A stretch of DNA of 64,000 nt from Schmidtea polychroa. Taxonomy: Eukaryota. Below are positions 32,601 through 57,100 of this stretch, piece by piece. Position 1 is the stretch's first letter; each line of letters opens with the position of its first letter. The notes under the pieces were generated by a model, which was given only the letters and a program-made list of their open reading frames with translations, did not search any database and had not been told where the DNA came from. Made by a program: the position numbers and the translations under genes. The stretch covers positions 85,250,001-85,314,000 of the forward strand of contig CM097885.1 in NCBI GenBank assembly GCA_044892525.1, written 5' to 3'.

Positions 32601-35600
32601 TTTTTCACCGTTAAAATTTCAAATTTCTTATTCTCGTCTTTTTCCCTGAGAGAAATATTTTGCTCCCTTACTTTGACTTTTGAGTCGCTCATTTGGCAAA
32701 TTGATAAACTCCACAAAACAAAAAGTAATGGAGAAATAATATTATTTTCAAAATTTTAATTTAAATAAACATTTGGTGATATTATTTTACATTTATTTTA
32801 CATTTAATAGGTTAAACATTTATCAAGAGCTTAAATATTTTAAAAAAATCCATAAAGCTCATCTAATCGTTTGAGCTGGCAAAAGGTTATAAAATAGAAA
32901 CCGAATAAGTTATGGTTACCTTCACAGATAGATGATCACATGTATGAGTTATTTGATAAGAATATAAATAATCTAAAACTACTAAAATATTAGTATAAAT
33001 ATCGGTAACTAAAATGTGCACATAATTGATCAATTGAAACTAACATGTATTTTTATTTATATTTACAGAAAAAATGCATTATTAAATGTCGAACCCATAT
33101 ACGGCTCTACCCATATACGGTGCTACCCATATACAGTGCTACCCATATACAGTGCTACCCATATACGGTGCTACCCATATACGGTCCTACCCATATACGG
33201 TCCTACCCATATACGGTCCTACCAATATACGGTGCTACCCATATACGGTGCTACCCATATACGGTCCTACCCATATACGGTCCTACCCATATACGGTGCT
33301 ACCCATATACGGTGCTACCCATATACGGCTCTACCCATATACGGCTCTACCCATATACAGTGCTACCCATATTCGGCTCTACCCATATACAGTGCTACCC
33401 ATATTCGGCTCTACCCATCTACGGCTCTACCCATTTACGACGCTACCCATATACGGAACTAAAATAAAATACATAAAAAACCTATATATATATATATATA
33501 TATATATTGTTGGTTTGAAATTTTAGGATTTTAAAACAATTTTTACTGAATTAAAAGAATTCAATTTAAAGTTTTATTTTTTTAAGTTTGTTTTTACAAA
33601 CAGTTTTTTTAATTGATTGATTACTACTTTTTTCAATTTTAAAGTTATCAGATCCAACTCTTTCAACTATAATCTATTGCAATAGGGCCGATGTCTATAG
33701 CAACATAGCTTTAACCCTATATATAAAGTCTGATTTTTCATACATAGCCTTCATGCCGGTATGATCTGAAAGATGTAACTGGGTAAAAATATCAATTTGT
33801 GATGCAATATCATTATGAGCTACAATTAATTAATGGATGCTTTTTTCATCGATATAGTATAATTTTTCTTCAATTAAAATATATTTCTTAATTTTTTAAG
33901 AAAATCTTTCGAGATTGATTCGTCATACCGAACAATGAATCTGTTCCATATCTCAGAAATTCAATTATATTTTCTTTTGTTCGATGGTAAGTATGACTTT
34001 CATTGGGGAATTCTTTTTAAACTAATTTTATATCTTAAAACTTTAAATAAATAAAAAATTTATTTATAGTTTTTAATTACATTTTTATTTTTACAGTTCC
34101 ATTTATGGGTAGAGTCGTATATGGGTTCGATATTAAATAAAATGGCATCATTGTTTGCAGAAAACACAAATACCCAGAAAAGGAATTTCTTTATTAACGA
34201 CTTTGAAAACATAATCCAACACAACTGTTATCATTTCAAGAATATCACTAGTTACATTTATCACCGGAGACAAATCAGGTTTCATATACTCGTGCTTTTC
34301 TTTATTTCGTGATCCTTCTTTCATTAGATCCAAACCGTAGCTTTCAGATTCATGAGCGATTCCTTGCACTTCGATAGGGACAAACATAGCTCCATTATTT
34401 TTAGTTTTGTCCAATAGTTCATATTTCATATCACATAAATAATCTTCATTTTGTTTTCCAATCGAAATATTACTTTGATCTTTACTTTGTAAATTTGTAG
34501 ACTTATCTTTCATTGTGATATTAGGCAGTGGGATGCTCATTGAATACTTGCATAACGCCTCTGATTCTTTAAGATTTTCGAAATCTTGGATAATACTAGA
34601 AAATGTACAAGAGTTTTTCATTTTGAAATTGTCAGATTTGGGAAAATCAAATGAACGAAACTTGTTATTGAACATATTTTGAATTTCTACTTTATATTTG
34701 TAAGAATATACATCATCATCATGTATCAATTCATTTCCAATGACACGAGAATTTGCGTCAGACCTTCTTTCAATTGCATCAGTTATTTAGAATAGAGCCT
34801 ATGGATGAATATTAATTCCAACGCCAGGTTCCATTTTTTTCTCCATTTTAAACAACATCACAAAATCTCCTTTTAAAACAAACTCAAGCTTCCAGAATAC
34901 AATTTTCTACCAAACCTCTAAATCAAAATCAATCTTTTATAATAAAATATAAAATATACCAATTCTTCGCGTCTGTGTGCGCACATCAATATCACGATAA
35001 TTCGGCACACAGACGCGAGAAAACTCAACAAACAAAAACTGCCAGTCAGAGGTAGACGTCATTCCCCCCTCTGACTGGTCGAAATTCTTTTTAAACTAAT
35101 TTTATATCTTAAAATTTTTAAATAAATAAAAAATTAATTCATAGTTTTTAATTACATTTTTATTTTTACAGTTCCATTTATTGGTAGAGTCGTATATGGG
35201 TTCGATATTAAATAAAATGGCATCATAGACATCATTTTTTAACAGTTTCCCAATGTTCTTGATATTAAAAAAGTCAAAGCTAAATAGCAGTCATTTAATA
35301 CTTGGATTTAAATTTTGTGAGAATTTCAATTACAACTTTAATGATACGCGTTGTTATACATGGTTAACAGGTGAGTGAAGGAATTGGTAAAGAGTAAAAC
35401 TGTTCTATATCCATTATTTTCCTAGGGCAGTTTTATTGGAAGAATCATAGCTTACATCAGTGGTTCTCAATTAATATAAAAGCGCGGAATACTGTCGTAA
35501 ATCTGTCGTAAACGTAAACAATGCCTTCTTATAAGCAAAGAAAATACCACGCGCAACAATAACAAGCAATAAAAACACTTTTATATTTGTATGTTTATAT

Positions 35601-38600
35601 ATCTGTGTAACGGCTTTCTTATTGAATCATCTTATAAAAAAATTAATTGAGGTTTTTGATGATATGTATCTTAAATGCAAATTTAAAGATAAAATATCAT
35701 TTTTTTCGCAGAACAGGGGTTGAGAACTACTGGCTTACATATATACAATTCTGGAATGTATTAGATAACTTGATAAGAAATTTTATATTTATTACAAAAG
35801 AATTAATAATAAATTAAAACATATTTGATAAATACATACGTAATGCAAACATTTTGATTTCATCAACACAAAATCATCCCAAGTGCCAAATTGACCATAT
35901 TGTTATGACAATTTTGAAGATAAATCGTTTTGATTTCGTAAAAAAAAATTAAATACTTATTATTTTTATTATTAAATTTTTAAAATATATTTCAAACTAT
36001 TATCAATAAATAAGATGATGTTTAAATCAAGAATTATGGTTGATGGAAGGGAAAATTTCACCAGTGAATTAGTGATTCCCATATGAAATAATCAATTAAA
36101 TATGTAAAATATCAATATTTAATGAATAAATAATTATTTATTTTGGATTTTCATTTGAAATCCTAATCAGAACGCTGTCGACCACTTAATGAGATTACCA
36201 AGTTAATTGTGAAAGAAATTGATCAAATAATANNNNNNNNNNNNNNNNNNNNNNNNNNNNNNNNNNNNNNNNNNNNNNNNNNNNNNNNNNNNNNNNNNNN
36301 NNNNNNNNNNNNNNNNNNNNNNNNNNNNNNNNNNNNNNNNNNNNNNNNNNNNNNNNNNNNNNNNNNNNNNNNNNNNNNNNNNNNNNNNNNNNNNNNNNNN
36401 NNNNNNNNNNNNNNNNNNNNNNNNNNNNNNNNNNNNNNNNNNNNNNNNNNNNNNNNNNNNNNNNNNNNNNNNNNNNNNNNNNNNNNNNNNNNNNNNNNNN
36501 NNNNNNNNNNNNNNNNNNNNNNNNNNNNNNNNNNNNNNCAATATACGTTTGTTATGGCTTCATATAAACCGAAAAAGTCAGATGCAACAGAAATTATGCA
36601 AATAGATGGATACACCGTTGATTATTGTGATGCACAATCAGGTAAAGGAGCCATTTCATTAGCAACATAACATGTTATTAAAACCTTTAATTTCCTAATA
36701 GAATACTATTCAATGATGAAATCCAAAAGAAATTTTTCTTGTAAAAGACAATTTTTAAAATTTAGTAAATAAATATCACTTTTCGAAACAGATTTCCGTA
36801 AACAAAAATTAGAATTACAATTCTAGAATATATCCAAAATAAGGGATACATATAATATATATATGAATCGCCCATTTCCCTGCACTTATTGGGTATTAAT
36901 AACTTACTTGTTCAGAAAATTCATCAAATTTCAATTCGCATTTTTCATTTGATAGTAATTGATAAAAATTAAATGGTTTTAGGATTGTACAAGTTTAAAG
37001 GATCTTTATATCTGATTGATAAAATAATTAATTTAATCATGTTCTGCATGAATGATAAGTTATGTATGAATGGTATGTGATCGACACTATTTATGCTTGA
37101 ATTTCTCTGGATAAATGTTTAGATATAATTCAGGTTCTTCATTACTAATTTATTTACCAAGATTGGTATTTATATGAAAATAATTATGTAGTTGAAAAAA
37201 AGAATTTTTAGAAAATTTAGTATAAATTTAACAAATGACAATAAGCATATAAGCTGTGAGGGTAAAAATGTTCAATTGGAAAAAAAGTAATCTAGTGAAA
37301 CAAAAGTGACACTTAATACAATAATTCCCTAACCCCCTTTGCTGCAACAAACAGAGAAATCGAAAATCAGACTTTTTTTCTATCGAAAATTTATACTGGA
37401 AGCATGAAGTAAACCTATTTCAATTAAATTTTATTACTGAATTTGAACTTAATTATAATCCCGATCCCTGTATTGAAGGTTGTACTCAGTTAGCCATGGC
37501 CAACCGGTGGCCCACGAAGCGTTTTGATGTGGCCCGGACACAATTTTAAACATCAAATCAATAATTGTCTTTTTTAGAATTCATATTCGAATTAAGCATG
37601 TTTTTAATTTAAAAAATTGATTCTAAGTTTACTTGAATCGTAAAAACGAGTTATATTTATTTAAATGAATTTATTGTGGCCCGTGATAGTATTTTTCCGA
37701 AAATTTTGGCCCTTAGATTGATTTGGGTTGGCCACCACTGTACTAAGTAGATCTATGAATCTAAATTTAATATTGTGGTTCGAGCAGGTTAATACAAATA
37801 GCTAATAAAGATGTAGTACCTAGAGTTAAGAAATAGTTCTGTGGTCACTTGGTATAATTTGGTTATAATCACTTTTCAAATTTATATTGAGTAACCGGAG
37901 TTAGGGGGAAAATGATGCAAAAGCATTTTTTCATCATGCTATTCTCAATATTTTATGATTAATAATAATAATGATAATTATTCAAAAACATGTATCCTTG
38001 ATATATTTAAAATGTTTGTATTAGTATGACAAATGAAACCGGAAATATAAAAGATAACAATATAGTATTATGATAATATAATGAAATGTATTTTCTTGCA
38101 GTTTCTCAAATTTTTGCTAAATTTCGACAGACTTTAGATAATCTCCCAATGTGGGTCATTGTTGAGAATTCTAGTTCAGTTACCCTTAAGTCCCTTAGAT
38201 AATCCATGCTTATGTATTACCCGCGCCAGGAGATTTCGAGTAAAATTTACTTTTTTCATTTTGTATACACCAACACTTTTAATTTATTTTTTATATCACT
38301 TCTTCTTAAGATAACCCATGGGTTACCTATAAGACTTTTGGGTAGATAAATGGTTCTAAGTAAGAAGTAAAATATATAATGCTCTATTCAATATTTGAAG
38401 ATAATTTATCTGGAAAAAATTCGAAAAGTATTAAGATCAGAAAAGTTATTAGCGAAAGCCATTTTTGTCAAAATCTCATAATCATAATCTCATTACTAAT
38501 GCCTATGAATTTGTTCGGGTTTCTTTATAAATAGGCTCTTTATCTTATTATAGCTTATTTCGTTAATGATTAATTTCTTAATCATCATATTCTCCTTAAT

Positions 38601-41600
38601 ATTTTTGATATTCCACTTCAGATAATGATGTTCATTTTTTATTCTTCAAAATCATTTATGATGTATATTCTTTAGATTTGGTAACAAATACCTCCAAATA
38701 CTTTTTCAATCTTGTCAAGGAAGGAGACAATGTATTAGCGGCTACAGCTGACGAAAATGAACGGCAGCTTTGGGTGCAAGCTATTTACAGAGCAACTGGA
38801 CAAACCCACAAACCGGTGTTAATTGTCAATCAAAATAGTAAAGCAAAACCAGGCACACCGCGCTCATTTAGCGGTGGTGGTAAAATTAATTTTTTTAAGG
38901 CTGGTCAGTTCATGTATTAATTTCATAGATTCCGATAGAGCCAAAAAACACGGATTGGAAAAATTTGTGTCAATTGAGCCATGGAAATTTCCGCATGCTG
39001 ATTTATTTAGAAATCTTCAATCTTTATCTTTGGATTTTCGTCTTAAAGATCAATATGTCTCCTTGGGTTGGTTCAATCCTGGTCAGATGTTCGTGTTAGA
39101 TGAGTACTGTGCACGATATGGAGTGAGAGGATGCTATAGACACCTATGTTACTTGTCGGATCTTCTTGATAAGGCTGAACACGGTACAATGATTGACCCT
39201 GCTCTAGTTCATTACAGTTATGCATTTTGCTCAAGCCATGTCTGNNNNNNNNNNNNNNNNNNNNNNNNNNNNNNNNNNNNNNNNNNNNNNNNNNNNNNNN
39301 NNNNNNNNNNNNNNNNNNNNNNNNNNNNNNNNNNNNNNNNNNNNNNNNNNNNNNNNNNNNNNNNNNNNNNNNNNNNNNNNNNNNNNNNNNNNNNNNNNNN
39401 NNNNNNNNNNNNNNNNNNNNNNNNNNNNNNNNNNNNNNNNNNNNNNNNNNNNNNNNNNNNNNNNNNNNNNNNNNNNNNNNNNNNNNNNNNNNNNNNNNNN
39501 NNNNNNNNNNNNNNNNNNNNNNNNNNNNNNNNNNNNNNNNNNNNNNNNNNNNNNNNNNNNNNNNNNNNNNNNNNNNNNNNNNNNNNNNNNNNNNNNNCCT
39601 AAGTATTATCATGAAATGAAATTGGAATGAATCATTATTTGTGGGAAAATATTGTTTTAGTATGAATAACTGATTAGCTAATCATGTTGCATCATCAATT
39701 ATGTATAATATATAGGAAAAGTACATTTAATAGTAGTAGTGATGACTCTGAAAATATTAAAATAATATCTGATAAAAAAACAACATATTTTTTTAAATTT
39801 TCTCCCAGGTTGCAATGTGAAACATCGGATGAGTAAAATTTTAAATCAATTAGAACAGAATTTTTTATTAAATGTGTAAATTTTGTTTTTCATAAAATGG
39901 CTTCTGTTTGCTTCACATAGAAATGTTAATATTATTTTAATAATCTGAATAATATTCTGGTTATTTGTTCTAATCATTTTTATGATTTTTATTATTACCT
40001 ATTTGATTTGGTCACACATTTTATCTTTTAAATCAAAATTATATTATCAAAATCTTTAAAATAGTAAATTGTTTATATATTATATTTATAAATTATAAAT
40101 TAATGGCTTTGAAAATGTTTATTCAGTCAAATTGACTTTTTTCTCCCCCAAATTTATTATTTATAATTTCTCATGTAATAGATTTTTTATATTATATTAC
40201 ATTTTTGTTCATTTTATTATAAAAATTTTTATGGTACTTACGACAATATTCCTTTGATTGCAGTCCTATATTATTCTGATATACATATTGTTTTCATGTA
40301 TTTCTCCATAGGAAGAGGAGCTTAGACTCAAATTGTCCGTACAAATATTTGGTGCACCTGCGTAGATATAGTAACAATCAGTGCATTTTCTCTGACGGCG
40401 TTCCGGCACCTTTTTTCGCTGAATGATTTTAAAAAATTGACATATGTTTTGGTTTTTTGTCATATTTCTATTTCTGATATTTCAAATAGTCAATTACAAT
40501 CAAATTAAAAGTATTAGTCGTACGCCAAAGCGAGTGAATCATAACTCCGTGCTTTCTATGTGTTTTTACTATTATATAAAACACGCTTACAGTAAATATA
40601 CGCCATTAATATACTACGTCATTAAAACCGTTTCATGTCGTCGGCGTTGTAAATTCACATTGTAAAATAATCAATATATTTAAAATTTCAAAAAATTCAG
40701 CGTCATTTTTTTTCATATAAAGGATAGTACAGATACGTTCCGGGACCTTTTTTCCAGAAAAAAAGCACTGGTAACAATATTTATTATTATTATTATTATT
40801 AGTTTTTTCCTAATTTCTAATTTAACAGATCGGTTCGTGTCTGTTGCGTTCAAGATGCTAAGCTTTCCCATAAATATACGACTAAATCTAAGGAAATTTT
40901 ATTGGCTTGATCAATTAAGACAATTTATCAGCAGACCTTGAATGAAATAATTGAATATAGAGAGGATCATATGATAAATGACAATTGAGATAGTTCATTC
41001 TATATATTAGCAATGAAATATTGGAACTGGTGGATTAGGAGCAATTAATAAATCACTCAATTCTTAGGGATATTGGATTTGCATATTTTCCTTGATCTAT
41101 TTCTCTGTAAATTTATTACTTCGTTCACTCTTATATTTGATCATCATTTTTTCCGTATATTTTTCTCCATGTGTTCATTAACGTTTCTTTCATTGTAGAT
41201 TATTTATTCAAATTGACGAGGAAAGATTTTGAAAGGATTTCTTTCATTTTCTACGATTGATAATCTCAATAGAATTGTCATATTTGCAATTTGAATAATT
41301 GCAAATGAACCGTTGATTAATATTCTTTTATATAGTTTGAAGAATTCAAAACAACAAAATGTTTCAAACGTCTTCTTCAGAATTATCATTCTTTAAATCT
41401 AACACTTTGATCTCGTTAATAGCTATGACTTTCTTTTTATTCTTTTTTTAATCATTATGTTCATATTTCTCCATATGAATTAATTATTAATAAACTATAA
41501 GTTTTATTAAAGGTTTTTGACTCTTCAGTATATTGAAAAGCAAGAATTTCTGAATTAAAAATTACTATTATGCATATGGCGTCTATATTTATGCTGCGGA

Positions 41601-44600: not shown

Positions 44601-47600
44601 TCTACAAATTTTAAAAAGTTACCGTTATTTTTTTCATAGATAGTATCTGACGAGCCACGCAGAGACAGGCATTGTCTGGCAAGATATTTTATGATTTCGA
44701 CAATTCTCTCCAAAACAGCGTACCAATGTTTCTTTTCAACTGCGTATACTTTTACGAGTTCAGCATCTATTGTAGTTAAGTTGTTCATTTTCTTTTTTAA
44801 TTGAGTCCACTTTAAAAAACAATTAACATGTAATGTACTAACTTCATGAGCTGCAAGTGTTTTTGACAAATTTCTCCAGCAACTAAAACCATTTATAATC
44901 AAATGCTGGTTTCCTTCTATTTGATTTATAAACAATTTACAACAAAAACAGAAAACACGGTTTGCTGAACTTGAATAAACTAACCATGATCTTGGTATAA
45001 TTTCATTATTAGGTAATTTACGATTGTAATAATAATTAGTAAAACTTCGTCCATCATCATCACGGGGATAAACTTCTTTCCTTATTTGCATTGGTCCTTG
45101 CTCAATAATAATTTTTCTAATTTTATCATTAATAAATTTAGGCCAAGTTGCGGGATCAATTGAATGAAAATCAGCACTATTACTTATAGTTTCAGTTAAA
45201 TGTATGGTTTGAAGCTCTTTGTTAGATGAAGATGTTATTTCTGTTTGTAAATTTATAGATTGTGTCTCATTAGTGGCATTATTTCTAACTTCACCATTTG
45301 TGCTATCCTCTGGAATAATCTGATCATCCGTTAACGTTATTGTAGGTATTGTCAAATTTGCTTTTTTTAAATATTGGTTAAGGCTTCCCTGATTTTTTTG
45401 TTCCTCCAACTCTCTCTTCGCCTTTCGTTTTCGATTTTCACACCCGGATAATTTTGTCTTTGAATTCATATTTTATGATATAGGTAAGCTAATAAAAATT
45501 TTTTTAATTAAAAAAATATAAATTTTAGAAGTAAAGATAAAAATAATTAAATAATACCTACCACCGTACAATGATTCAATTCCGCAAAATAACTAATGTA
45601 CTGAAACAAAACACTTTTTTACTATTAAACTGTACTGAATTTTATTTTACTATTAAAATTTTAATATTAAATTTTTTTTTATTAGCGAAAAAAGTTTACC
45701 AAATAACAACTGAACTGATTGAAAACTGAATAGAACTGATAGACTTTTAAAATAATTTTTTTTAGCATTAATTTTTTTAATCGAAATAACTAAACCGAAT
45801 ATAGCAGGCCGTTTCAAAATAAATTTATGCATGTATAATTTATTTTGTTTTGCGAAATAATTAAACAATTCTTAAACACTTCGAAACCTAGTAGGCCAGT
45901 AGTTTTTCAAGGAAATTTTATTTAAAAAAAAAAAAAATTTCTTATTAAAAAAAAATTTGTTAATGGTTTTTTTGTTAAATATTAAAAAGAAACTAAAATT
46001 CTAAATTGTTTAGCGCCCTTTCCGAGAGGCGCCCCGATGCTTTGCATCCACCGCTTCCNNNNNNNNNNNNNNNNNNNNNNNNNNNNNNNNNNNNNNNNNN
46101 NNNNNNNNNNNNNNNNNNNNNNNNNNNNNNNNNNNNNNNNNNNNNNNNNNNNNNNNNNNNNNNNNNNNNNNNNNNNNNNNNNNNNNNNNNNNNNNNNNNN
46201 NNNNNNNNNNNNNNNNNNNNNNNNNNNNNNNNNNNNNNNNNNNNNNNNNNNNNNNNNNNNNNNNNNNNNNNNNNNNNNNNNNNNNNNNNNNNNNNNNNNN
46301 NNNNNNNNNNNNNNNNNNNNNNNNNNNNNNNNNNNNNNNNNTCTAATAATTATCTGTCAATTATTAGTAAACTGTAAAAAGTGTTATCAAAATGCCTGTA
46401 TTTCCGAATTCCGTTAACTCTCAGAACTCTACAATAAATAGTGAACTCATTATATCTCCTTAATATCAGCCTATTTACTTCCAAAAATATTATTTTAACT
46501 TTTACTTTTTGAAATTAACATTCCAAGTACATTTTTACTGTTATTTTAGGATTTTTGCCCGAGCCATACTATTATTGTATTATAGTATTATAGATAATAT
46601 TTAATAATTGATATTAACCAATCACCGTTTAGACAGGACATGAGTATCCGCACGGTACTAACTGAAGAAAGGGATAAATTTCTCGAAGTTAAGGCAAGAT
46701 TGTCTGCTTTATTAGAAAGACAAATTACCGAATTTCGATATTATTTTCCTTTTGGAAGACCCGAAGGTGCTCTCAAACAAACATTAGGCCTTTTAGAGCG
46801 AGTAAATTTCATCATTATTTTTAGCTTTTATACATTTTATTGAAATTTATCGACTATGGCAACGATCATAGCCATTATGATAATGGATGGCATAGATCAA
46901 ACCTGACAAACTCAGACGAACGCCTTTCAATTTAATTGATAAATAATTCAGAATTTCTTTCTTTAAAATTTCAATTAATTTATTAAATTTTCTTTTAAAA
47001 ATGTTCAATTAAATTGATTAATTTATCTATCGATTATTTGAAGGGAAATTTGAAATGAAAATTATCTGCATTGTGAAAAGATTTTCCGGTAAAATCAATT
47101 ATTTCCCGTGCTTTTTTAATTTGTTGAAAATAATTAATCAATTCCTTTAATCGATAGCATCAATGGTTTTTTAATTGAAAAATATAAACAAATTGAAATA
47201 TTTTTACTTCAATACAATGAGACAGTTGTTTGAATGTCGTGAGTTTGGAAAATTGTTCTCCTAGACGAGAATTTTTCATATCAAAATTCTGAATATTGTT
47301 TGAAAATGTATTTCGCAATTGCTCTGGAAACGAAATTTGCTTATCATTTATTTGTCTTATATATCAAGCACTGGAGATTNNNNNNNNNNNNNNNNNNNNN
47401 NNNNNNNNNNNNNNNNNNNNNNNNNNNNNNNNNNNNNNNNNNNNNNNNNNNNNNNNNNNNNNNNNNNNNNNNNNNNNNNNNNNNNNNNNNNNNNNNNNNN
47501 NNNNNNNNNNNNNNNNNNNNNNNNNNNNNNNNNNNNNNNNNNNNNNNNNNNNNNNNTTATAAGATTATTACACCTGTTTGCACGGAATATAAGCATCTAT

Positions 47601-50600: not shown

Positions 50601-51328
50601 TAATCAGTTATTTTCTCATTCTGGTCCCTGGATTTCTTATGATTATCCTCATTATTATAATTTCTATAGCATTGTCTGATTAAATGCCGGGTTTTCACTA
50701 TAGAATAAAGTAAAATGGAATATTTGTAATACATTGTCACAACATAATTTGCGCATTGCGTTATTCTCTTTCGCCTTTCTATTATTAGTACTATTAATAA
50801 TGGGAACACTTGAATGAGACAAATCATGAAAATATCTTTCCCATATAATTCATAATTTATTCCCGAAATTTTGTTGATTGATTTTCTGGACTGTGAAGTG
50901 AAAATATTGAGATCCTATTTATTAATTGAGCATCGTTGTCCAGAATACGAAACCTCTTGATGGCATTTCGTTAGGAAAAACCTAATAATCTAAATGTTGT
51001 TATTGAAAATGGAAAAATAAAAATATTTATTATATATGTTTATTCTCAATATTTAATTAATTTTCAAAAAACATTTTCTATGGTAATTCCTGTCTTGATA
51101 TTAGGTATTAATGAAAGACTCTGGTGCTCCAGCATCTGCTGAAGAAGTACGATTCGTCATCAAAGGTTGTTTAGAAAAAGCCGCCCTAGTAAATTATACT
51201 AGGGTGTCAGAATATGCAAATATCGAAGGTTTATCATTTTAAATATTTAATGCATATTATTGCTTTCATTTTACTAGCGCAAGATTCCAGTAACAAAAAT
51301 GGTATTTATATTTTGTTTAATTTGAATA

Positions 51329-54152: not shown

Positions 54153-57100
54153 AGATGGCCCCTGGTTTGGGGCATCATTTTTCACCCGGGGGTGCCCCAG
54201 AACTTTAAATGTAAAATAAATAAGTTTCATGATAAAAGCATTTATTTTTTAATCAAAAAATCGGTAATTTTGATTTCACAAGCTTTTCTAATATCATTCA
54301 AAAGTTTTTCTAAAGAATCTGAAATAAATATTCTAATATTTTCCTCTAATTTTTCTAATTGTTTTAAAACATCTGAAGTTTCAACATCATTTATAATCTC
54401 TTCGCCATTGTAAAATTTAATGTTTTCAATCCCATCAAGATTTTCAAATGTTTCTTCTATTACGTCATTGATATTTTCTTCAACTTCATCCTTTATAATG
54501 TCACCAAGGTCTGATTTACGATATTCATTAATTTTATTCCAACAATTTTTGATAGTTTCAACCCTTAACATTTCCCAAGCCTCTGAAATTATAACAATAG
54601 CTTGTTGTATATTTAATTTGGAAAGAAAATTCGATTATTCATAATTATTAAGAAAAAAATTCATGAGTATATAAGTTTTGAAAGTTTTTATGATGCCCAT
54701 ATCAAAGGTTGAATAAGTGAAGTTGTTTTTGAATAAAAATAATAACTTGACATTTAAACATTCCAATGATTTATGACAACTGGTATTATTAAGAAGGAGA
54801 ACTATTTTTCTATTTTGCTTGATCATTTCAGTATTTAACATTCTCAGCCATGTTTGAAATATTTCTGTTGTCATCCAAGCATTTTTTGAAGATAAATATA
54901 AAACTCTGAAATCTTTAAGATTAAAGTTTTTCATACATCGGGGATTTTTCTATTTTTCAATAGTAAGTGGTTCTAGTTTTTCGTCTTCTAAACTACAAAA
55001 CAAAAATAAAGTAATATTTCTTTGATTTTTTAGCTACATTATAACTGTCACTTTTCTCAACAAAAGATTTAGATGGAAGATTTTTTATAAATAACGCCGT
55101 TTCATCACAATTAAATGTTACGTTGTCCGTATTCTAAAATGTATTTATCATATGCAAAGTAAAATTCATCTAAACCCGATTTGTCTGCAGATTTGGTTTC
55201 ACCACAGATCTTTTTGAACAACAACAATTTACATCTATCTAACTAACCTTTAGACGCACAAAAATCTTTAATAGACATTTTAATAATTTAATAGACACTT
55301 TTTTTCCAATCATTTTAAGTACTGGTCCATTTATTCAAATATCATCTTCTCTTAATTTTAAAAAACTTTCGTATACCATAATTGTTTCGGCTGATTTTGA
55401 GCTCGCGTCAATGTGCACGTTGTTGTGGTGGTTTTTTTTGTATGTGTGTACATACAGACACGGACAGGGTTATTTTTTACTCTTTTTGTTTGTATTTGAA
55501 TTTCGGAATTTTCTCCCTTCCTCGCGTTTGTGTGTGCATAATTTTGGAATTATTATTTGGTTTATCGAAATTGATTGACATTTTGGAATTTTTCGATATT
55601 ATGTTTTTGTTTGTATACTTGGAAAATATGTCAACATGTGTTTACATTTTAAATTTGAAGATTAACAGATTTCTATGAAATTATTAAATTAATTGTTTAA
55701 TGTCAAAATAATGCCAATGCTGCTGTTCGAAACGAACGTTATGGAATTGCGTTCAATGAATATAAACGATATTAAATATATTAAATTCTATGCCGTTAGA
55801 GACTGATGACGAGGAGAAAATTCGATCGAGTCATGTTGTGAAATTATATTTGAATATGGCTCATGGTGATTTGAAATTAAACCGGGAACCATCTGCAATC
55901 AAATGTTGCAATACGGTGTTTGCTAAGCAGTCTGTGAATGCAAGAGCCCTTTATCGAAAAGGAAAGGGTCTGATGATTATTAGAGAATTTGAAGCTAGTA
56001 TTTCAAAAAATTGTCAAACTCGAGATCATGTTTTGTTGCCTCATACAGTTGGAGTCAAGCAAATGATAATTTATGTAAATAAGACCTTGATTCAGACTTC
56101 ATTTGAATTTTATTTGTTCATTAATAATAATAATAATACACAAACATCTTTTGTGATTAATTATGGATGAGAAACTTAATTTTTGTCAATAAAATTTAGA
56201 AAATTTGAAAAATGGTAAATTCCATCTACAACTAGTAGAAATTTTTACTCCTCAAGTTGTCAGATATGTGGATCTAATGGAGGCATCAATAGGGCAATCA
56301 ATTCAGAAATCATTCGAGCATGAAGCCTGCAATCAGTCAGTAAATATAACATCTGCTGCCGGTTTAACGAATATGACATCGATGAGTGTAGGCTCGTTAG
56401 TAACTGCAGCAGCCAGCTCAGTTGTTGGTAACAGCAACTTTAGTAATGATAATTTTCCAGATGGGGGTAATGCGTTCGGTATTTCATCTGGCGGTAGCAA
56501 TCCACAGCCATTTGATGTTAAAACTGACGATTTACTATGGAAACTTGAAGCACTTCAGAATTTCATTAAAGAACTTCATTGGCCGGAAGAAATATTTGCC
56601 GAACATTTAGATAACAGATTAAAGATGATGGCAGCCGACATGATTGAAGCTGCAGCCCAAGGGTGATTGAATTATCGTAGGAGAGATTTGATTAGCTTTA
56701 ATATTTTACAGAACATTGAATTGCTTCGATTCCATGTTAAAAATGTCCACAAAAACTACAGATTTTATTTTGCATTCTGAATGCTGTGCTATGCTAAATG
56801 CCATCATTAACATGAAAGCCAGTGTATTCAAGCTCTGCACTATGAATATGGGAACCAATATTGTAAGACTACAAAATAATTGTAANNNNNNNNNNNNNNN
56901 NNNNNNNNNNNNNNNNNNNNNNNNNNNNNNNNNNNNNNNNNNNNNNNNNNNNNNNNNNNNNNNNNNNNNNNNNNNNNNNNNNNNNNNNNNNNNNNNNNNN
57001 NNNNNNNNNNNNNNNNNNNNNNNNNNNNNNNNNNNNNNNNNNNNNNNNNNNNNNNNNNNNNNNNNNNNNNNNNNNNNNNNNNNNNNNNNNNNNNNNNNNN

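What the first reader, a model, noticed from the sequence alone, without database searches (positions are those of the whole stretch)
34009..35226. eIF3f with its MPN core swapped for ~111 foreign in-frame codons, bracketed by ~143-bp direct repeats
Seen: a 931-bp insert (34152-35082) between two near-identical 143-bp repeats that are themselves the end of the neighbouring minisatellite TIR element. The insert reads in one frame as eIF3f N-terminus ([23 protein letters not shown]), ~111 Ser/Asn/Lys/Asp-rich stop-free codons, then the eIF3f C-terminal region; the stop codon is supplied by the repeat. Knowledge: eIF3f has about 110 residues (the MPN core with GWYATG) between RVIG and GxMFxP, so the replacement is nearly length-neutral and in frame at both junctions. 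Inference: double template switching or DNA-level capture produced a domain-swapped chimera, and the unusually long duplication points to one-ended transposition or templated break repair. It is antisense to the CAPS pre-mRNA, so it could yield antisense or small RNAs against eIF3f.
Basis: partly seen in the sequence, partly recalled or inferred. Interest (0 to 1): 0.72.

Follow-up and report, generated by a model that had tools for sequence, protein, structure and literature searches.

The report
Solo LTR carrying a chimeric eIF3f ORF
The 931-bp insert is one dead copy of a retrotransposon long terminal repeat, present in hundreds of copies, that long ago captured pieces of two host genes (eIF3f and an unknown gene) into one reading frame; it landed here by a faulty integration that duplicated 143 bp of target DNA.

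Summary
A 931-bp insert (34152-35082) lies between two 143/144-bp direct repeats. On the minus strand it reads eIF3f N-terminus, then foreign codons, then eIF3f C-terminal region. The interpretation needs re-framing.

- **Not a local event.** The insert is one copy of a repeat with hundreds to about 1,000 copies.
- **It is a solo LTR.** The family has TG...CA ends and 5-bp target duplications. Three loci show a polypurine tract and a shared internal region with a protease remnant just before the TG.
- **eIF3f capture.** Older LTR versions carry an intron-less eIF3f fragment, codons 1 to about 215. The parent gene at C1:49.05 Mb has a 42-bp intron there.
- **Second capture.** The MPN core was replaced by 405 bp of a conserved single-copy host ORF at C3:133.64 Mb, which is 96.5-97% identical. 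The junctions carry 8- and 9-bp microhomologies and are in frame.
- **The 143-bp duplication.** It spans the host transposon's end plus 11 bp of flank. The LTR has lost its terminal TG on that side. This matches uncoordinated integration, as in a published retrovirus case with a 273-bp duplication.

This is a known kind of event (LTR-mediated gene capture) and the copy here is inert. The scan has already noted two other copies.

The parts
33079..34140 (.). Host transposon into which the LTR inserted. It has 42-bp terminal inverted repeats and a 16-bp minisatellite at 33008-33509.
   Evidence: Inverted arms 33079-33120 / 34099-34140 are 88% complementary. The genome holds about 40 candidate copies, and their matches end at window 34139-34142.
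34009..34151 (.). Target duplication, copy A: the last ~132 bp of the host transposon plus 11 bp of its flank.
   Evidence: 143/144 nt, 96.5% identical to 35083-35226. A copy-A-specific unitig covering 34066-34151 is present in two runs of one study, P1 (X1, X3).
34152..35082 (-). Solo LTR (sense strand = minus) of the short chimeric subfamily. The U5-side end ...AAACA is intact at 34152. The U3-side end lacks the terminal TG (up to TGTT) at 35082-35084.
   Evidence: Other copies align exactly to 34147/52-35084 with unrelated flanks. The family has TG...CA ends and 5-bp TSDs. A PPT and internal region lie upstream of the TG at L008, L038 and L046.
34838..35082 (-). LTR 5' module with two hairpin-forming inverted repeats. 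It is not homologous to the eIF3f locus.
   Evidence: No match within +/-10 kb of the parent gene. Over 1,000 candidates genome-wide, always upstream of eIF3f-derived sequence in the loci read. No Rfam match.
34737..34837 (-). eIF3f N-terminal codons (M...RVIG), with in-frame stops at 34799-34801 (TAG) and 34787-34789 (TAA).
   Evidence: 87% identical to parent gene L045 over 101 nt. Translation.
34395..34738 (-). Segment captured from the single-copy donor ORF (NELIHDD...ELLDKTK).
   Evidence: 96.5% identical over 344 nt to L040/L060:8443-9654. The donor's C-terminal half is single copy. The donor ortholog P0001 in a related species keeps the donor architecture.
34185..34403 (-). eIF3f C-terminal-region codons ([10 protein letters not shown]...VVNKE), the first half of MitMem_reg.
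   Evidence: 87% identical to the parent over 219 nt, with a 9-bp overlap with the donor segment. Pfam PF13012 E=0.003.
34152..34184 (-). LTR 3' terminal segment ending ...GCAGAAAACA.
   Evidence: Shared by family members and unrelated to the parent eIF3f 3' end.
35083..35226 (.). Target duplication, copy B, followed by unique flank from 35227.
   Evidence: A unitig covering 35088-35226 (X5) and unitigs covering 35197-35450 (X1, X3, X5) link it to the right flank. The flank 35227-35450 has no other genomic match.

Best explanation
Window 34152-35082 is a solo long terminal repeat of an LTR retrotransposon family with hundreds to about 1,000 copies. The genome is 781 Mb with four chromosome-scale contigs; I guess it is a planarian, but did not verify this. 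The history I infer has six steps. (1) During reverse transcription the element's LTR acquired a spliced eIF3f mRNA fragment, from the start codon to about codon 215. (2) A second double template switch, at 8-bp and 9-bp microhomologies, replaced the MPN core (about 91 codons) with 405 bp of a conserved single-copy host ORF, in that ORF's own frame. (3) A 108-bp segment with GT...AG ends was later lost in frame, probably by splicing of the element's RNA. This produced the short subfamily found here. (4) Because the captured sequence lies inside the LTR, every replication cycle copied it to both LTRs, and it survives in solo LTRs. (5) Integration is normally integrase-type, giving TG...CA ends, a 5-bp duplication, and a preference for ATTAT/(ATT)n targets. 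At this locus the U3-side end had lost its terminal TG and the two ends joined 143 bp apart. Gap repair then duplicated 143 bp of target. (6) LTR-LTR recombination left a solo LTR. The copy now carries two in-frame stops and is most likely inert. It probably lies in an intron of the CAPS gene, in antisense orientation. Shown by data: family membership, the donor and parent genes, the junctions, the family's 5-bp TSDs, and the PPT plus internal region. Inferred: the RNA-level mechanism of capture and deletion, uncoordinated integration, and solo-LTR formation.
For: Copy number and discrete ends: 61 scored matches out of 1,252 candidates, aligning to 34147/52-35084 with unrelated flanks. LTR features: TG...CA ends. 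The 5 nt before TG equal the 5 nt after CA in 11 of 19 independent chimeric-family copies, and match 4 of 5 in 5 more. Among five non-chimeric copies checked, two match exactly and one 4 of 5. Loci L008, L038 and L046 share 0.45-0.87 kb of upstream sequence abutting the LTR (L008 and L038 about 1 kb in all). It ends in a polypurine tract directly before TG. That region has a retro-protease-like remnant and at least 463 genomic candidates, including 4,448-bp tandem periods. Parent gene: JAB plus MitMem_reg at C1:49.045 Mb, with a 42-bp GT-AG intron that is absent from every LTR copy read. Only the CDS part is homologous to the LTR. Donor: 96.5-97.3% identity, with a single-copy C-terminal half. 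An ortholog with donor architecture exists in another species. An 830-nt contig from a run guessed to be RNA continues into donor-specific sequence. Junction microhomologies are TTCATTTG and TAAAAGTAA, and the deletion has GT...AG ends. Order of captures: dS to the parent is about 0.24, dS to the donor about 0.11. Target duplication: it spans the host transposon's end at 34140 plus 11 bp of flank. Precedents: an XMRV provirus with a 273-bp duplication and a 5-bp deletion removing the CA at the U3 end (PMC2857682), and LTR-mediated chimeric retrocopies formed at microsimilarities (PMC5131818).
Against: I saw no 5' LTR followed by a primer-binding site, and no complete LTR-internal-LTR element at sequence level. 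Paired structure rests only on coordinates (C4:63.672 Mb LTR with an internal hit 3 kb downstream; 4,448-bp arrays). The internal region gives only weak protease signals, and no RT or integrase was seen. Among about 30 sequenced copies I found three 3' LTRs and no 5' LTR. The read evidence consists of short unitigs, none of which bridges the repeat-LTR-repeat structure. A rearrangement after a normal integration could also produce the 143-bp duplication.
Confidence: 0.78

Rival explanations
1. A unique eIF3f retrocopy or gene copy at this locus had its MPN core swapped by local double template switching or DNA capture. The 143-bp repeats would come from one-ended transposition of that chimera or from break repair.
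For: The tripartite in-frame structure and the long flanking duplication are real.
Against: The same chimera, with the same junctions, occurs at dozens of sequenced loci and hundreds of candidate loci with unrelated flanks. The local RVIG|NELI junction is a subfamily-wide deletion.
Confidence: 0.03
2. The 931-bp unit is a LINE-dependent retroposon (a SINE-like or processed-pseudogene family) inserted by target-primed reverse transcription. The 143 bp would be an unusually long TPRT duplication.
For: The eIF3f part lacks the intron. Several copies are followed by (AAT)n, which could pass for a microsatellite tail.
Against: The (AAT)n runs flank both sides, so they are target microsatellites. 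Many copies have no tail. The ends are TG...CA with a fixed 5-bp duplication. A polypurine tract and a shared internal region precede the unit at three loci. There is no systematic 5' truncation.
Confidence: 0.05
3. The LTR integrated normally, and the 143-bp duplication with loss of the terminal TG arose later. Possible causes are break repair at the LTR edge or replication slippage / template switching copying upstream target DNA.
For: The right-hand copy ends with ...ATCAT, which would be the expected 5-bp duplicate of the ATCAT before the LTR. The structure therefore equals a normal insertion plus a 138-bp filler copied from upstream. A 2-nt AA microhomology sits at the truncated junction.
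Against: This needs two events where uncoordinated integration needs one. The published retroviral case shows the same pair of features arising at integration. The sequence alone does not discriminate between the two.
Confidence: 0.15
4. The 143-bp direct repeat is an assembly artefact or a pre-existing tandem feature of the host transposon.
For: No single read or contig bridging the whole structure was available.
Against: The two copies differ at 5 positions and 1 indel. Copy-specific unitigs occur in runs from two studies. Other copies of the host transposon show no such duplication, and the duplicated block extends 11 bp beyond the transposon's end.
Confidence: 0.04

Closest known systems
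LTR-mediated retroposition / chimeric retrocopies (Tan et al. 2016, Genome Res, PMC5131818)
   Same: A partial, intron-less host mRNA fragment embedded in LTR-retrotransposon sequence. Short microsimilarities at the fusion points. Fragments of two unlinked host genes joined. The chimera re-mobilised as part of the element.
   Different: The captures here sit inside the LTR itself rather than in the internal region. They are therefore duplicated at each cycle and persist in solo LTRs. The copy number is hundreds to about 1,000, not one to a few. Three successive remodellings all kept the frame.
Maize Bs1 and other plant LTR retrotransposons with captured gene fragments (cited in PMC2774510 and PMC5131818)
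   Same: An LTR element that carries and amplifies host gene fragments and can fuse them into a hybrid ORF.
   Different: This is an animal genome. The captured ORF lies in the LTR. The maize survey found no element with fragments of more than one gene under its conditions.
Uncoordinated retroviral integration (XMRV clone C-3, Kim et al. 2010, PMC2857682)
   Same: A long target duplication (273 bp there, 143 bp here) where a short fixed one is normal, together with loss of the conserved terminal dinucleotide at the U3 end of the left LTR.
   Different: That case was an experimental infection of human cells. This is an old germ-line insertion of a retrotransposon, now reduced to a solo LTR, so the event is inferred rather than observed.
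eIF3f (MPN/JAB + MitMem_reg protein)
   Same: About 33 N-terminal and about 72 C-terminal-region residues are derived from the species' own eIF3f, at 87% nucleotide identity.
   Different: No MPN core and no C-terminal tail. Two stops in this copy. It is not a gene copy but part of a repeat.
LTR-encoded ORFs such as MMTV sag (from my own knowledge, not tested here)
   Same: A long open reading frame lying within an LTR.
   Different: No evidence here that the ORF is translated or functional. It originated from host gene fragments.

Membership tests
LTR of an LTR retrotransposon (solo LTR) | 5'-TG...CA-3' termini with a short terminal inverted repeat | tested here: met
   The family ends are TGTTTC(GA/AG)CC... 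and ...AAA(A/T)CA, i.e. TGTTT/AAACA. In the window copy the CA end is intact and the TG end is missing.
LTR of an LTR retrotransposon (solo LTR) | Short target-site duplication of fixed length (4-6 bp) | tested here: met
   A 5-bp TSD is exact in 11 of 19 chimeric-family copies and matches 4 of 5 in 5 more. Two of five non-chimeric copies checked (L044, L052) are exact and L048 matches 4 of 5. The window copy is the exception, with 143 bp.
LTR of an LTR retrotransposon (solo LTR) | Polypurine tract and shared internal region directly upstream of a 3' LTR | tested here: met
   L008 has AAGGAGGGGGAAA|TG, L038 has GGGAGGAAGGGGGAA|TG and L046 has AAGAAGGAGGGAAT|TG. The shared upstream sequence is 79-92% identical.
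LTR of an LTR retrotransposon (solo LTR) | Primer-binding site downstream of a 5' LTR; two LTRs in direct orientation around one internal region | tested here: inconclusive
   Coordinates only: an LTR at C4:63672157 with an internal hit at C4:63675185 on the same strand, and internal hits spaced 4,448 bp at C1:233.50 Mb. No sequence could be fetched.
LTR of an LTR retrotransposon (solo LTR) | Internal gag/pol (protease, RT, RNase H, integrase) | tested here: inconclusive
   Only a protease-like remnant: Asp_protease_2 at E=0.015, and Atlas feature hits to clusters with Asp_protease_2/DUF1758 at 0.91. The 4.4-kb unit suggests a non-autonomous element.
eIF3f (functional gene or gene copy) | MPN/JAB domain | tested here: not met
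   Pfam finds no JAB domain in the window ORF. The true gene and the older LTR versions have it.
eIF3f (functional gene or gene copy) | Complete MitMem_reg region and C-terminal tail, with an open frame | tested here: not met
   PF13012 positions 1-57 of 113 only, at 17.9 bits against a cut-off of 26.6. Two in-frame stops. The tail KPDPEVGRKL...LLNSA is absent.
LTR-mediated chimeric retrocopy (Tan et al. 2016) | Intron loss relative to the parent | tested here: met
   The 42-bp GT-AG intron of the parent is precisely absent.
LTR-mediated chimeric retrocopy (Tan et al. 2016) | Microsimilarity at fusion points; partial mRNA; flanked by LTR-element sequence | tested here: met
   8-bp and 9-bp shared stretches at the two eIF3f/donor junctions. 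Only codons 1 to about 215 of eIF3f and codons 42-176 of the donor are present. The backbone/eIF3f junctions could not be tested because no LTR without eIF3f was found.
LINE-mediated processed pseudogene / SINE-like retroposon | 3' poly(A) or microsatellite tail, variable-length TSD, 5' truncation | tested here: not met
   Many copies, including this one, have no tail. The (AAT)n runs lie on both flanks. The TSD is fixed at 5 bp.

The most novel reading that the evidence does not exclude
The LTR-borne chimeric ORF may not be mere cargo. It may have been kept open by selection in the replicating lineages, meaning the element used an LTR-encoded accessory protein made from host parts: the eIF3f ends plus a disordered host segment. 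Four observations hint at this. All three remodelling steps preserved the frame (about 1 in 27 by chance). About a third of copies, at 84-90% amino-acid identity to the query ORF, still have the 190-codon frame open. dN/dS among intact copies is 0.57. Substitutions shared by several copies are enriched for synonymous changes compared with singletons: 27 synonymous to 52 non-synonymous or stop, against 44 to 179, Fisher p=0.013. A related possibility is that small RNAs raised against about 1,000 LTR copies cross-target the donor gene and eIF3f, since exact matches reach about 100 nt family-wide.
Probability: 0.2. Interest if true: 0.7.

Novelty: new member of a known kind. Interest (0 to 1): 0.42.

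Why it matters
For annotation, this eIF3f-like ORF and its many siblings should be masked as LTR sequence. The scan has already flagged two siblings as separate curiosities. None should be called an eIF3f paralog or a domain-swapped gene.

For biology, the family records stepwise host-gene capture by an animal LTR retrotransposon: an mRNA capture, a second in-frame capture from another gene, and an intron-like deletion. All of this happened inside the LTR, which then amplified to hundreds of copies. Parent gene, donor gene and intermediates are all still in the genome. This locus is also a natural germ-line example of uncoordinated integration, with a long target duplication and a lost terminal dinucleotide. 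That event is otherwise documented mainly in experimental retroviral infections.

If the ORF was under selection, it would be a rare case of a retrotransposon building an accessory protein from host parts.

Tried and rejected
- **Rfam** on 33000-35400 at E<=1 gave no match, so the hairpins in the 5' module match no known RNA family.
- **LINE/SINE reading.** This was my first working idea, from apparent (AAT)n tails and an 18-bp flank match at L003. I dropped it once the ends were placed exactly. L003's duplication is 5 bp (GTTAT), and the microsatellites lie on both flanks.
- **Helitron reading** (hairpin near one end). Dropped because of the TSDs and the PPT plus internal region.
- **Sequence downstream of L015/L004 as a possible 5' internal region with a PBS.** It is an unrelated satellite-like repeat with a 378-bp period and 2,627 candidates.
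- **Flank all-against-all BLAST.** It found no common sequence directly after the CA end, so there is no 5' LTR in my sample.
- **Empty-site test with the right flank.** The search was swamped by a young high-copy repeat starting at 35498, and the flank itself is unique.
- **Read laying.** Only short Logan unitigs were available, so neither the full structure nor expression of the LTR could be settled.
- **Donor protein identity.** Pfam gave only a spurious weak hit, and Atlas gave no family at 0.86 or below.
- **Public protein search with the long chimeric ORF.** It returned only 4 hits and no chimera in other organisms.
- **No consensus, ancestral or repaired sequence was built.** This is retroelement sequence in an animal genome. 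All comparisons use natural copies.
Full report
**1. Observation.**
The sequence is as described. Positions 34009-34151 and 35083-35226 are direct repeats of 143/144 nt with 5 substitutions and one indel, 96.5% identity. Between them lie 931 bp (34152-35082). The minus strand of this insert reads [31 protein letters not shown], then 113 stop-free Ser/Asn/Lys/Asp-rich codons, then GAMFVPIEV...[17 protein letters not shown]. The final codon and the TGA stop are completed by the flank. Pfam sees only a sub-threshold MitMem_reg match, E=0.003.

**2. The insert is a repeat family, not a local event.**
A search of the window's own genome returned 61 scored matches out of 1,252 first-look candidates. 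That genome is 781 Mb with four chromosome-scale contigs, and the window is C1:85,250,001-85,314,000. Matches are 84-94% identical. A protein search gave 188 matches, and the 5' 233 nt alone gave more than 1,000 candidates. In ten fetched loci the homology starts and stops at window 34147/34152 and 35084, with unrelated flanks. The unit is therefore discrete and mobile. Two earlier first-stage notes of this scan are other copies of it: s1-220232, which is my L002/L016 at C1:61.25 Mb, and s1-208169 at C1:23.67 Mb.

**3. What the unit is.**
With the ORF strand as sense, the unit begins TGTTTC(GA/AG)CC and ends ...AAA(A/T)CA, so its ends are TG...CA with TGTTT/AAACA inverted termini.

- **Target duplications.** I compared the 5 nt before TG with the 5 nt after CA. 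They are identical in 11 of 19 independent full-length copies: GTTAT, ATGGT, CTATA, GTCAT, and seven ATTAT/ATAAT sites in (ATT)n microsatellites. They match at 4 of 5 positions in five more copies. Two older copies with an intact MPN core also have exact 5-bp duplications, TATAT and AATGC.
- **Copies without a duplication.** Two of the copies lacking one, L008 and L046, are instead preceded by a polypurine tract directly abutting the TG; so is L038. The tracts are AAGGAGGGGGAAA (L008), GGGAGGAAGGGGGAA (L038) and AAGAAGGAGGGAAT (L046). The three share upstream sequence that runs up to the LTR boundary, 0.45-0.87 kb between pairs and about 1 kb in all for L008 and L038, at 79-92% identity.
- **Internal region.** It contains a retroviral-type aspartic-protease remnant. 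Evidence is the motif ALLDDAS, Asp_protease_2 at E=0.015, and Atlas feature hits to clusters with Asp_protease_2/DUF1758. It has at least 463 genomic candidates, some spaced 4,448 bp apart in tandem. In at least three further loci it lies next to an LTR copy by coordinates.

These are the hallmarks of an LTR and its 3' internal junction. The window copy has host-transposon sequence on both sides, so it is a solo LTR.

Three things are missing. I saw no 5' LTR with a primer-binding site at sequence level. I saw no RT or integrase. My earlier LINE/SINE reading was abandoned. The apparent (AAT)n tails lie on both flanks, many copies have no tail, and the duplication length is fixed.

**4. Origin of the eIF3f parts.**
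Pfam JAB and MitMem_reg searches of the genome identify a gene at C1:~49,045,630-49,046,600. It has a full MPN core (...IVGWYSTG...), the complete C-terminal tail, and one 42-bp GT-AG intron after GLNGK. Its ortholog fragment P0002 exists in another species. Older versions of the LTR (L044, L046-L049, L052) carry this CDS from the start codon to about codon 215 with the intron precisely removed. They share neither the sequence upstream nor the sequence downstream with the gene locus. The LTR therefore captured a spliced mRNA fragment.

**5. Origin of the middle.**
Sense positions 345-688 of the window copy are 96.5% identical to an ORF at G000:C3:133,638,443-133,639,654. That ORF (L060:8443-9654) is 403 codons long and is followed by a GT splice donor. 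The long LTR variant matches it at 97.3% over 405 nt.

- The C-terminal half of this ORF is single copy in the genome.
- A 442-aa ortholog from another species (P0001) has the same donor-type architecture on both sides of the shared segment.
- An 830-nt contig from a run guessed to be RNA runs from the shared segment into donor-specific sequence.

Transfer therefore ran from host gene to LTR. The protein has no recognisable family.

**6. Junctions and later remodelling.**
- **eIF3f to donor.** In long chimeric copies (L015, L019, L028) the ORF reads ...RVIGTLLGYTDSRYIHVTNSF|VDFHCDDLTKSLFINSIEGNELIH.... At the DNA level, the parent and the donor share TTCATTTG at this junction.
- **Donor to eIF3f.** The two sequences share TAAAAGTAA at the return junction.
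- **Frame.** About 91 eIF3f codons were replaced by about 129 donor codons, read in the donor's own frame and back in frame.
- **Later deletion.** The window copy belongs to a subfamily lacking 108 bp (36 codons). That segment can be written GTACTC...TTGAAG, so it has GT...AG ends.
- **Order of events.** Synonymous divergence is about 0.24 to the eIF3f parent and about 0.11 to the donor, so the eIF3f capture came first.

The pattern matches LTR-mediated retroposition by microsimilarity-dependent template switching. That mechanism is known to produce multi-gene chimeras and re-mobilisation (PMC5131818). Gene-fragment capture by LTR elements is common in maize (PMC2774510).

**7. The 143-bp duplication.**
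The host sequence is a TIR/minisatellite transposon, with arms at 33079-33120 and 34099-34140. It has about 40 genomic relatives, and their matches end at window 34139-34142. The duplicated block 34009-34151 is therefore about 132 bp of that transposon plus 11 bp of unique flank. It is target DNA, not a property of the transposon end. Other copies of the transposon show no such duplication.

At 34151|34152 the LTR end is intact (...AAACA in sense). At 35082-35084 the LTR stops at ...TCGA(AA), so it lacks the terminal TG (up to TGTT). A 2-nt AA microhomology with the target sits there.

A long duplication together with loss of the conserved terminal dinucleotide at the U3 end has been described before. 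One of 15 XMRV proviruses had a 273-bp duplication and a 5-bp U3-end deletion, which the authors attributed to uncoordinated joining of the two ends (PMC2857682). I take this as the most likely mechanism, followed by LTR-LTR recombination to a solo LTR.

A normal integration followed by a 138-bp templated fill-in at the LTR edge cannot be excluded. The right-hand copy ends in ATCAT, which is the 5-mer a normal event would have duplicated.

An assembly artefact is unlikely. The two copies differ at six positions. Copy-specific unitigs occur in runs of two studies. However, no read bridging the whole structure was available.

**8. Function.**
This copy has two in-frame stops (34799-34801 and 34787-34789). 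Exons of a CAPS/MUN-domain gene lie on the + strand downstream: a MUN exon at 56208-56663 at E=5e-23, and a PH-like exon near 38.6 kb seen by eye. The LTR is thus probably intronic and antisense to that gene. It is most likely inert.

Its longest exact match to the eIF3f mRNA is 18 nt, against 75 nt to the donor mRNA. Family-wide, exact matches reach about 100 nt to both.

In the run guessed to be RNA, depth sits on the donor-derived part and continues into donor-specific sequence. The LTR-specific parts are near zero.

**9. A possible extra layer.**
- All three remodelling steps kept the frame.
- 10 of the 29 other best-matching loci listed (L012-L040; a few are duplicate fetches of one place) keep the 190-codon frame open, at 84-90% amino-acid identity to the query ORF.
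- dN/dS among intact copies is 0.57. This figure is ascertainment-biased.
- In a McDonald-Kreitman-like count against the natural donor and parent sequences, singleton changes are 44 synonymous to 179 non-synonymous or stop. Changes shared by 2 or more copies, up to 80% of copies, are 27 to 52. Fisher p=0.013.

This suggests, but does not show, that the ORF was under constraint in replicating lineages. The loci were picked by protein similarity, and shared sites may include recurrent changes.

**10. Verdict.**
The chimera is real and its donor has been identified. It is a family-wide feature of an LTR, produced by a known mechanism. The long duplication is best explained by a known kind of faulty integration. 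I rate it a new member of a known kind, of moderate interest.

Noticed in passing
window 35498-35700 and beyond: A very young high-copy repeat starts here. At least 40 genomic copies are 99-100% identical over 203 nt, out of 1,397 first-look candidates. It looks like a recently active element.
   Followed up: no
window 33008-33509 (within 33079-34140): The host transposon has 42-bp terminal inverted repeats and an internal 16-bp minisatellite of about 30 units. The family has about 40 candidates and a sharply defined right end at 34140.
   Followed up: partly
L002, L004, L006, L007, L021, L024, L025, L030 (flanks): The LTR family shows a strong insertion preference for (ATT)n/(AAT)n microsatellites. 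The duplicated 5-mer is ATTAT or ATAAT in 7 of 19 copies.
   Followed up: partly
L015:2088-2640; e.g. G000:C2:10176043-10180274: A satellite-like repeat with a 378-bp tandem period and 2,627 first-look candidates lies next to two LTR copies, L015 and L004, at almost the same offset.
   Followed up: no
G000:C1:233503578-233513064: The element's internal region recurs three times with a 4,448-bp period. This suggests tandem LTR-internal-LTR arrays of a short, probably non-autonomous element.
   Followed up: no
L060:8443-9654 (G000:C3:133638443-133639654): The donor gene is a single-copy, Ser/Asn/Lys-rich ORF of unknown family. It is conserved in a related species (P0001), and a run guessed to be RNA appears to hold it as an 830-nt contig at high depth.
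   Followed up: partly
G000:C1:9807769-9809661: Two LTR 5' modules lie in inverted orientation 1.7 kb apart. This could be head-to-head insertions or a rearrangement.
   Followed up: no
window 38609-38917, 46598-46840, 51105-51239, 56208-56663 (+ strand): Exon-like ORFs of a CAPS/MUN-domain gene lie on the + strand. The LTR therefore probably sits in one of its introns, in antisense orientation.
   Followed up: partly
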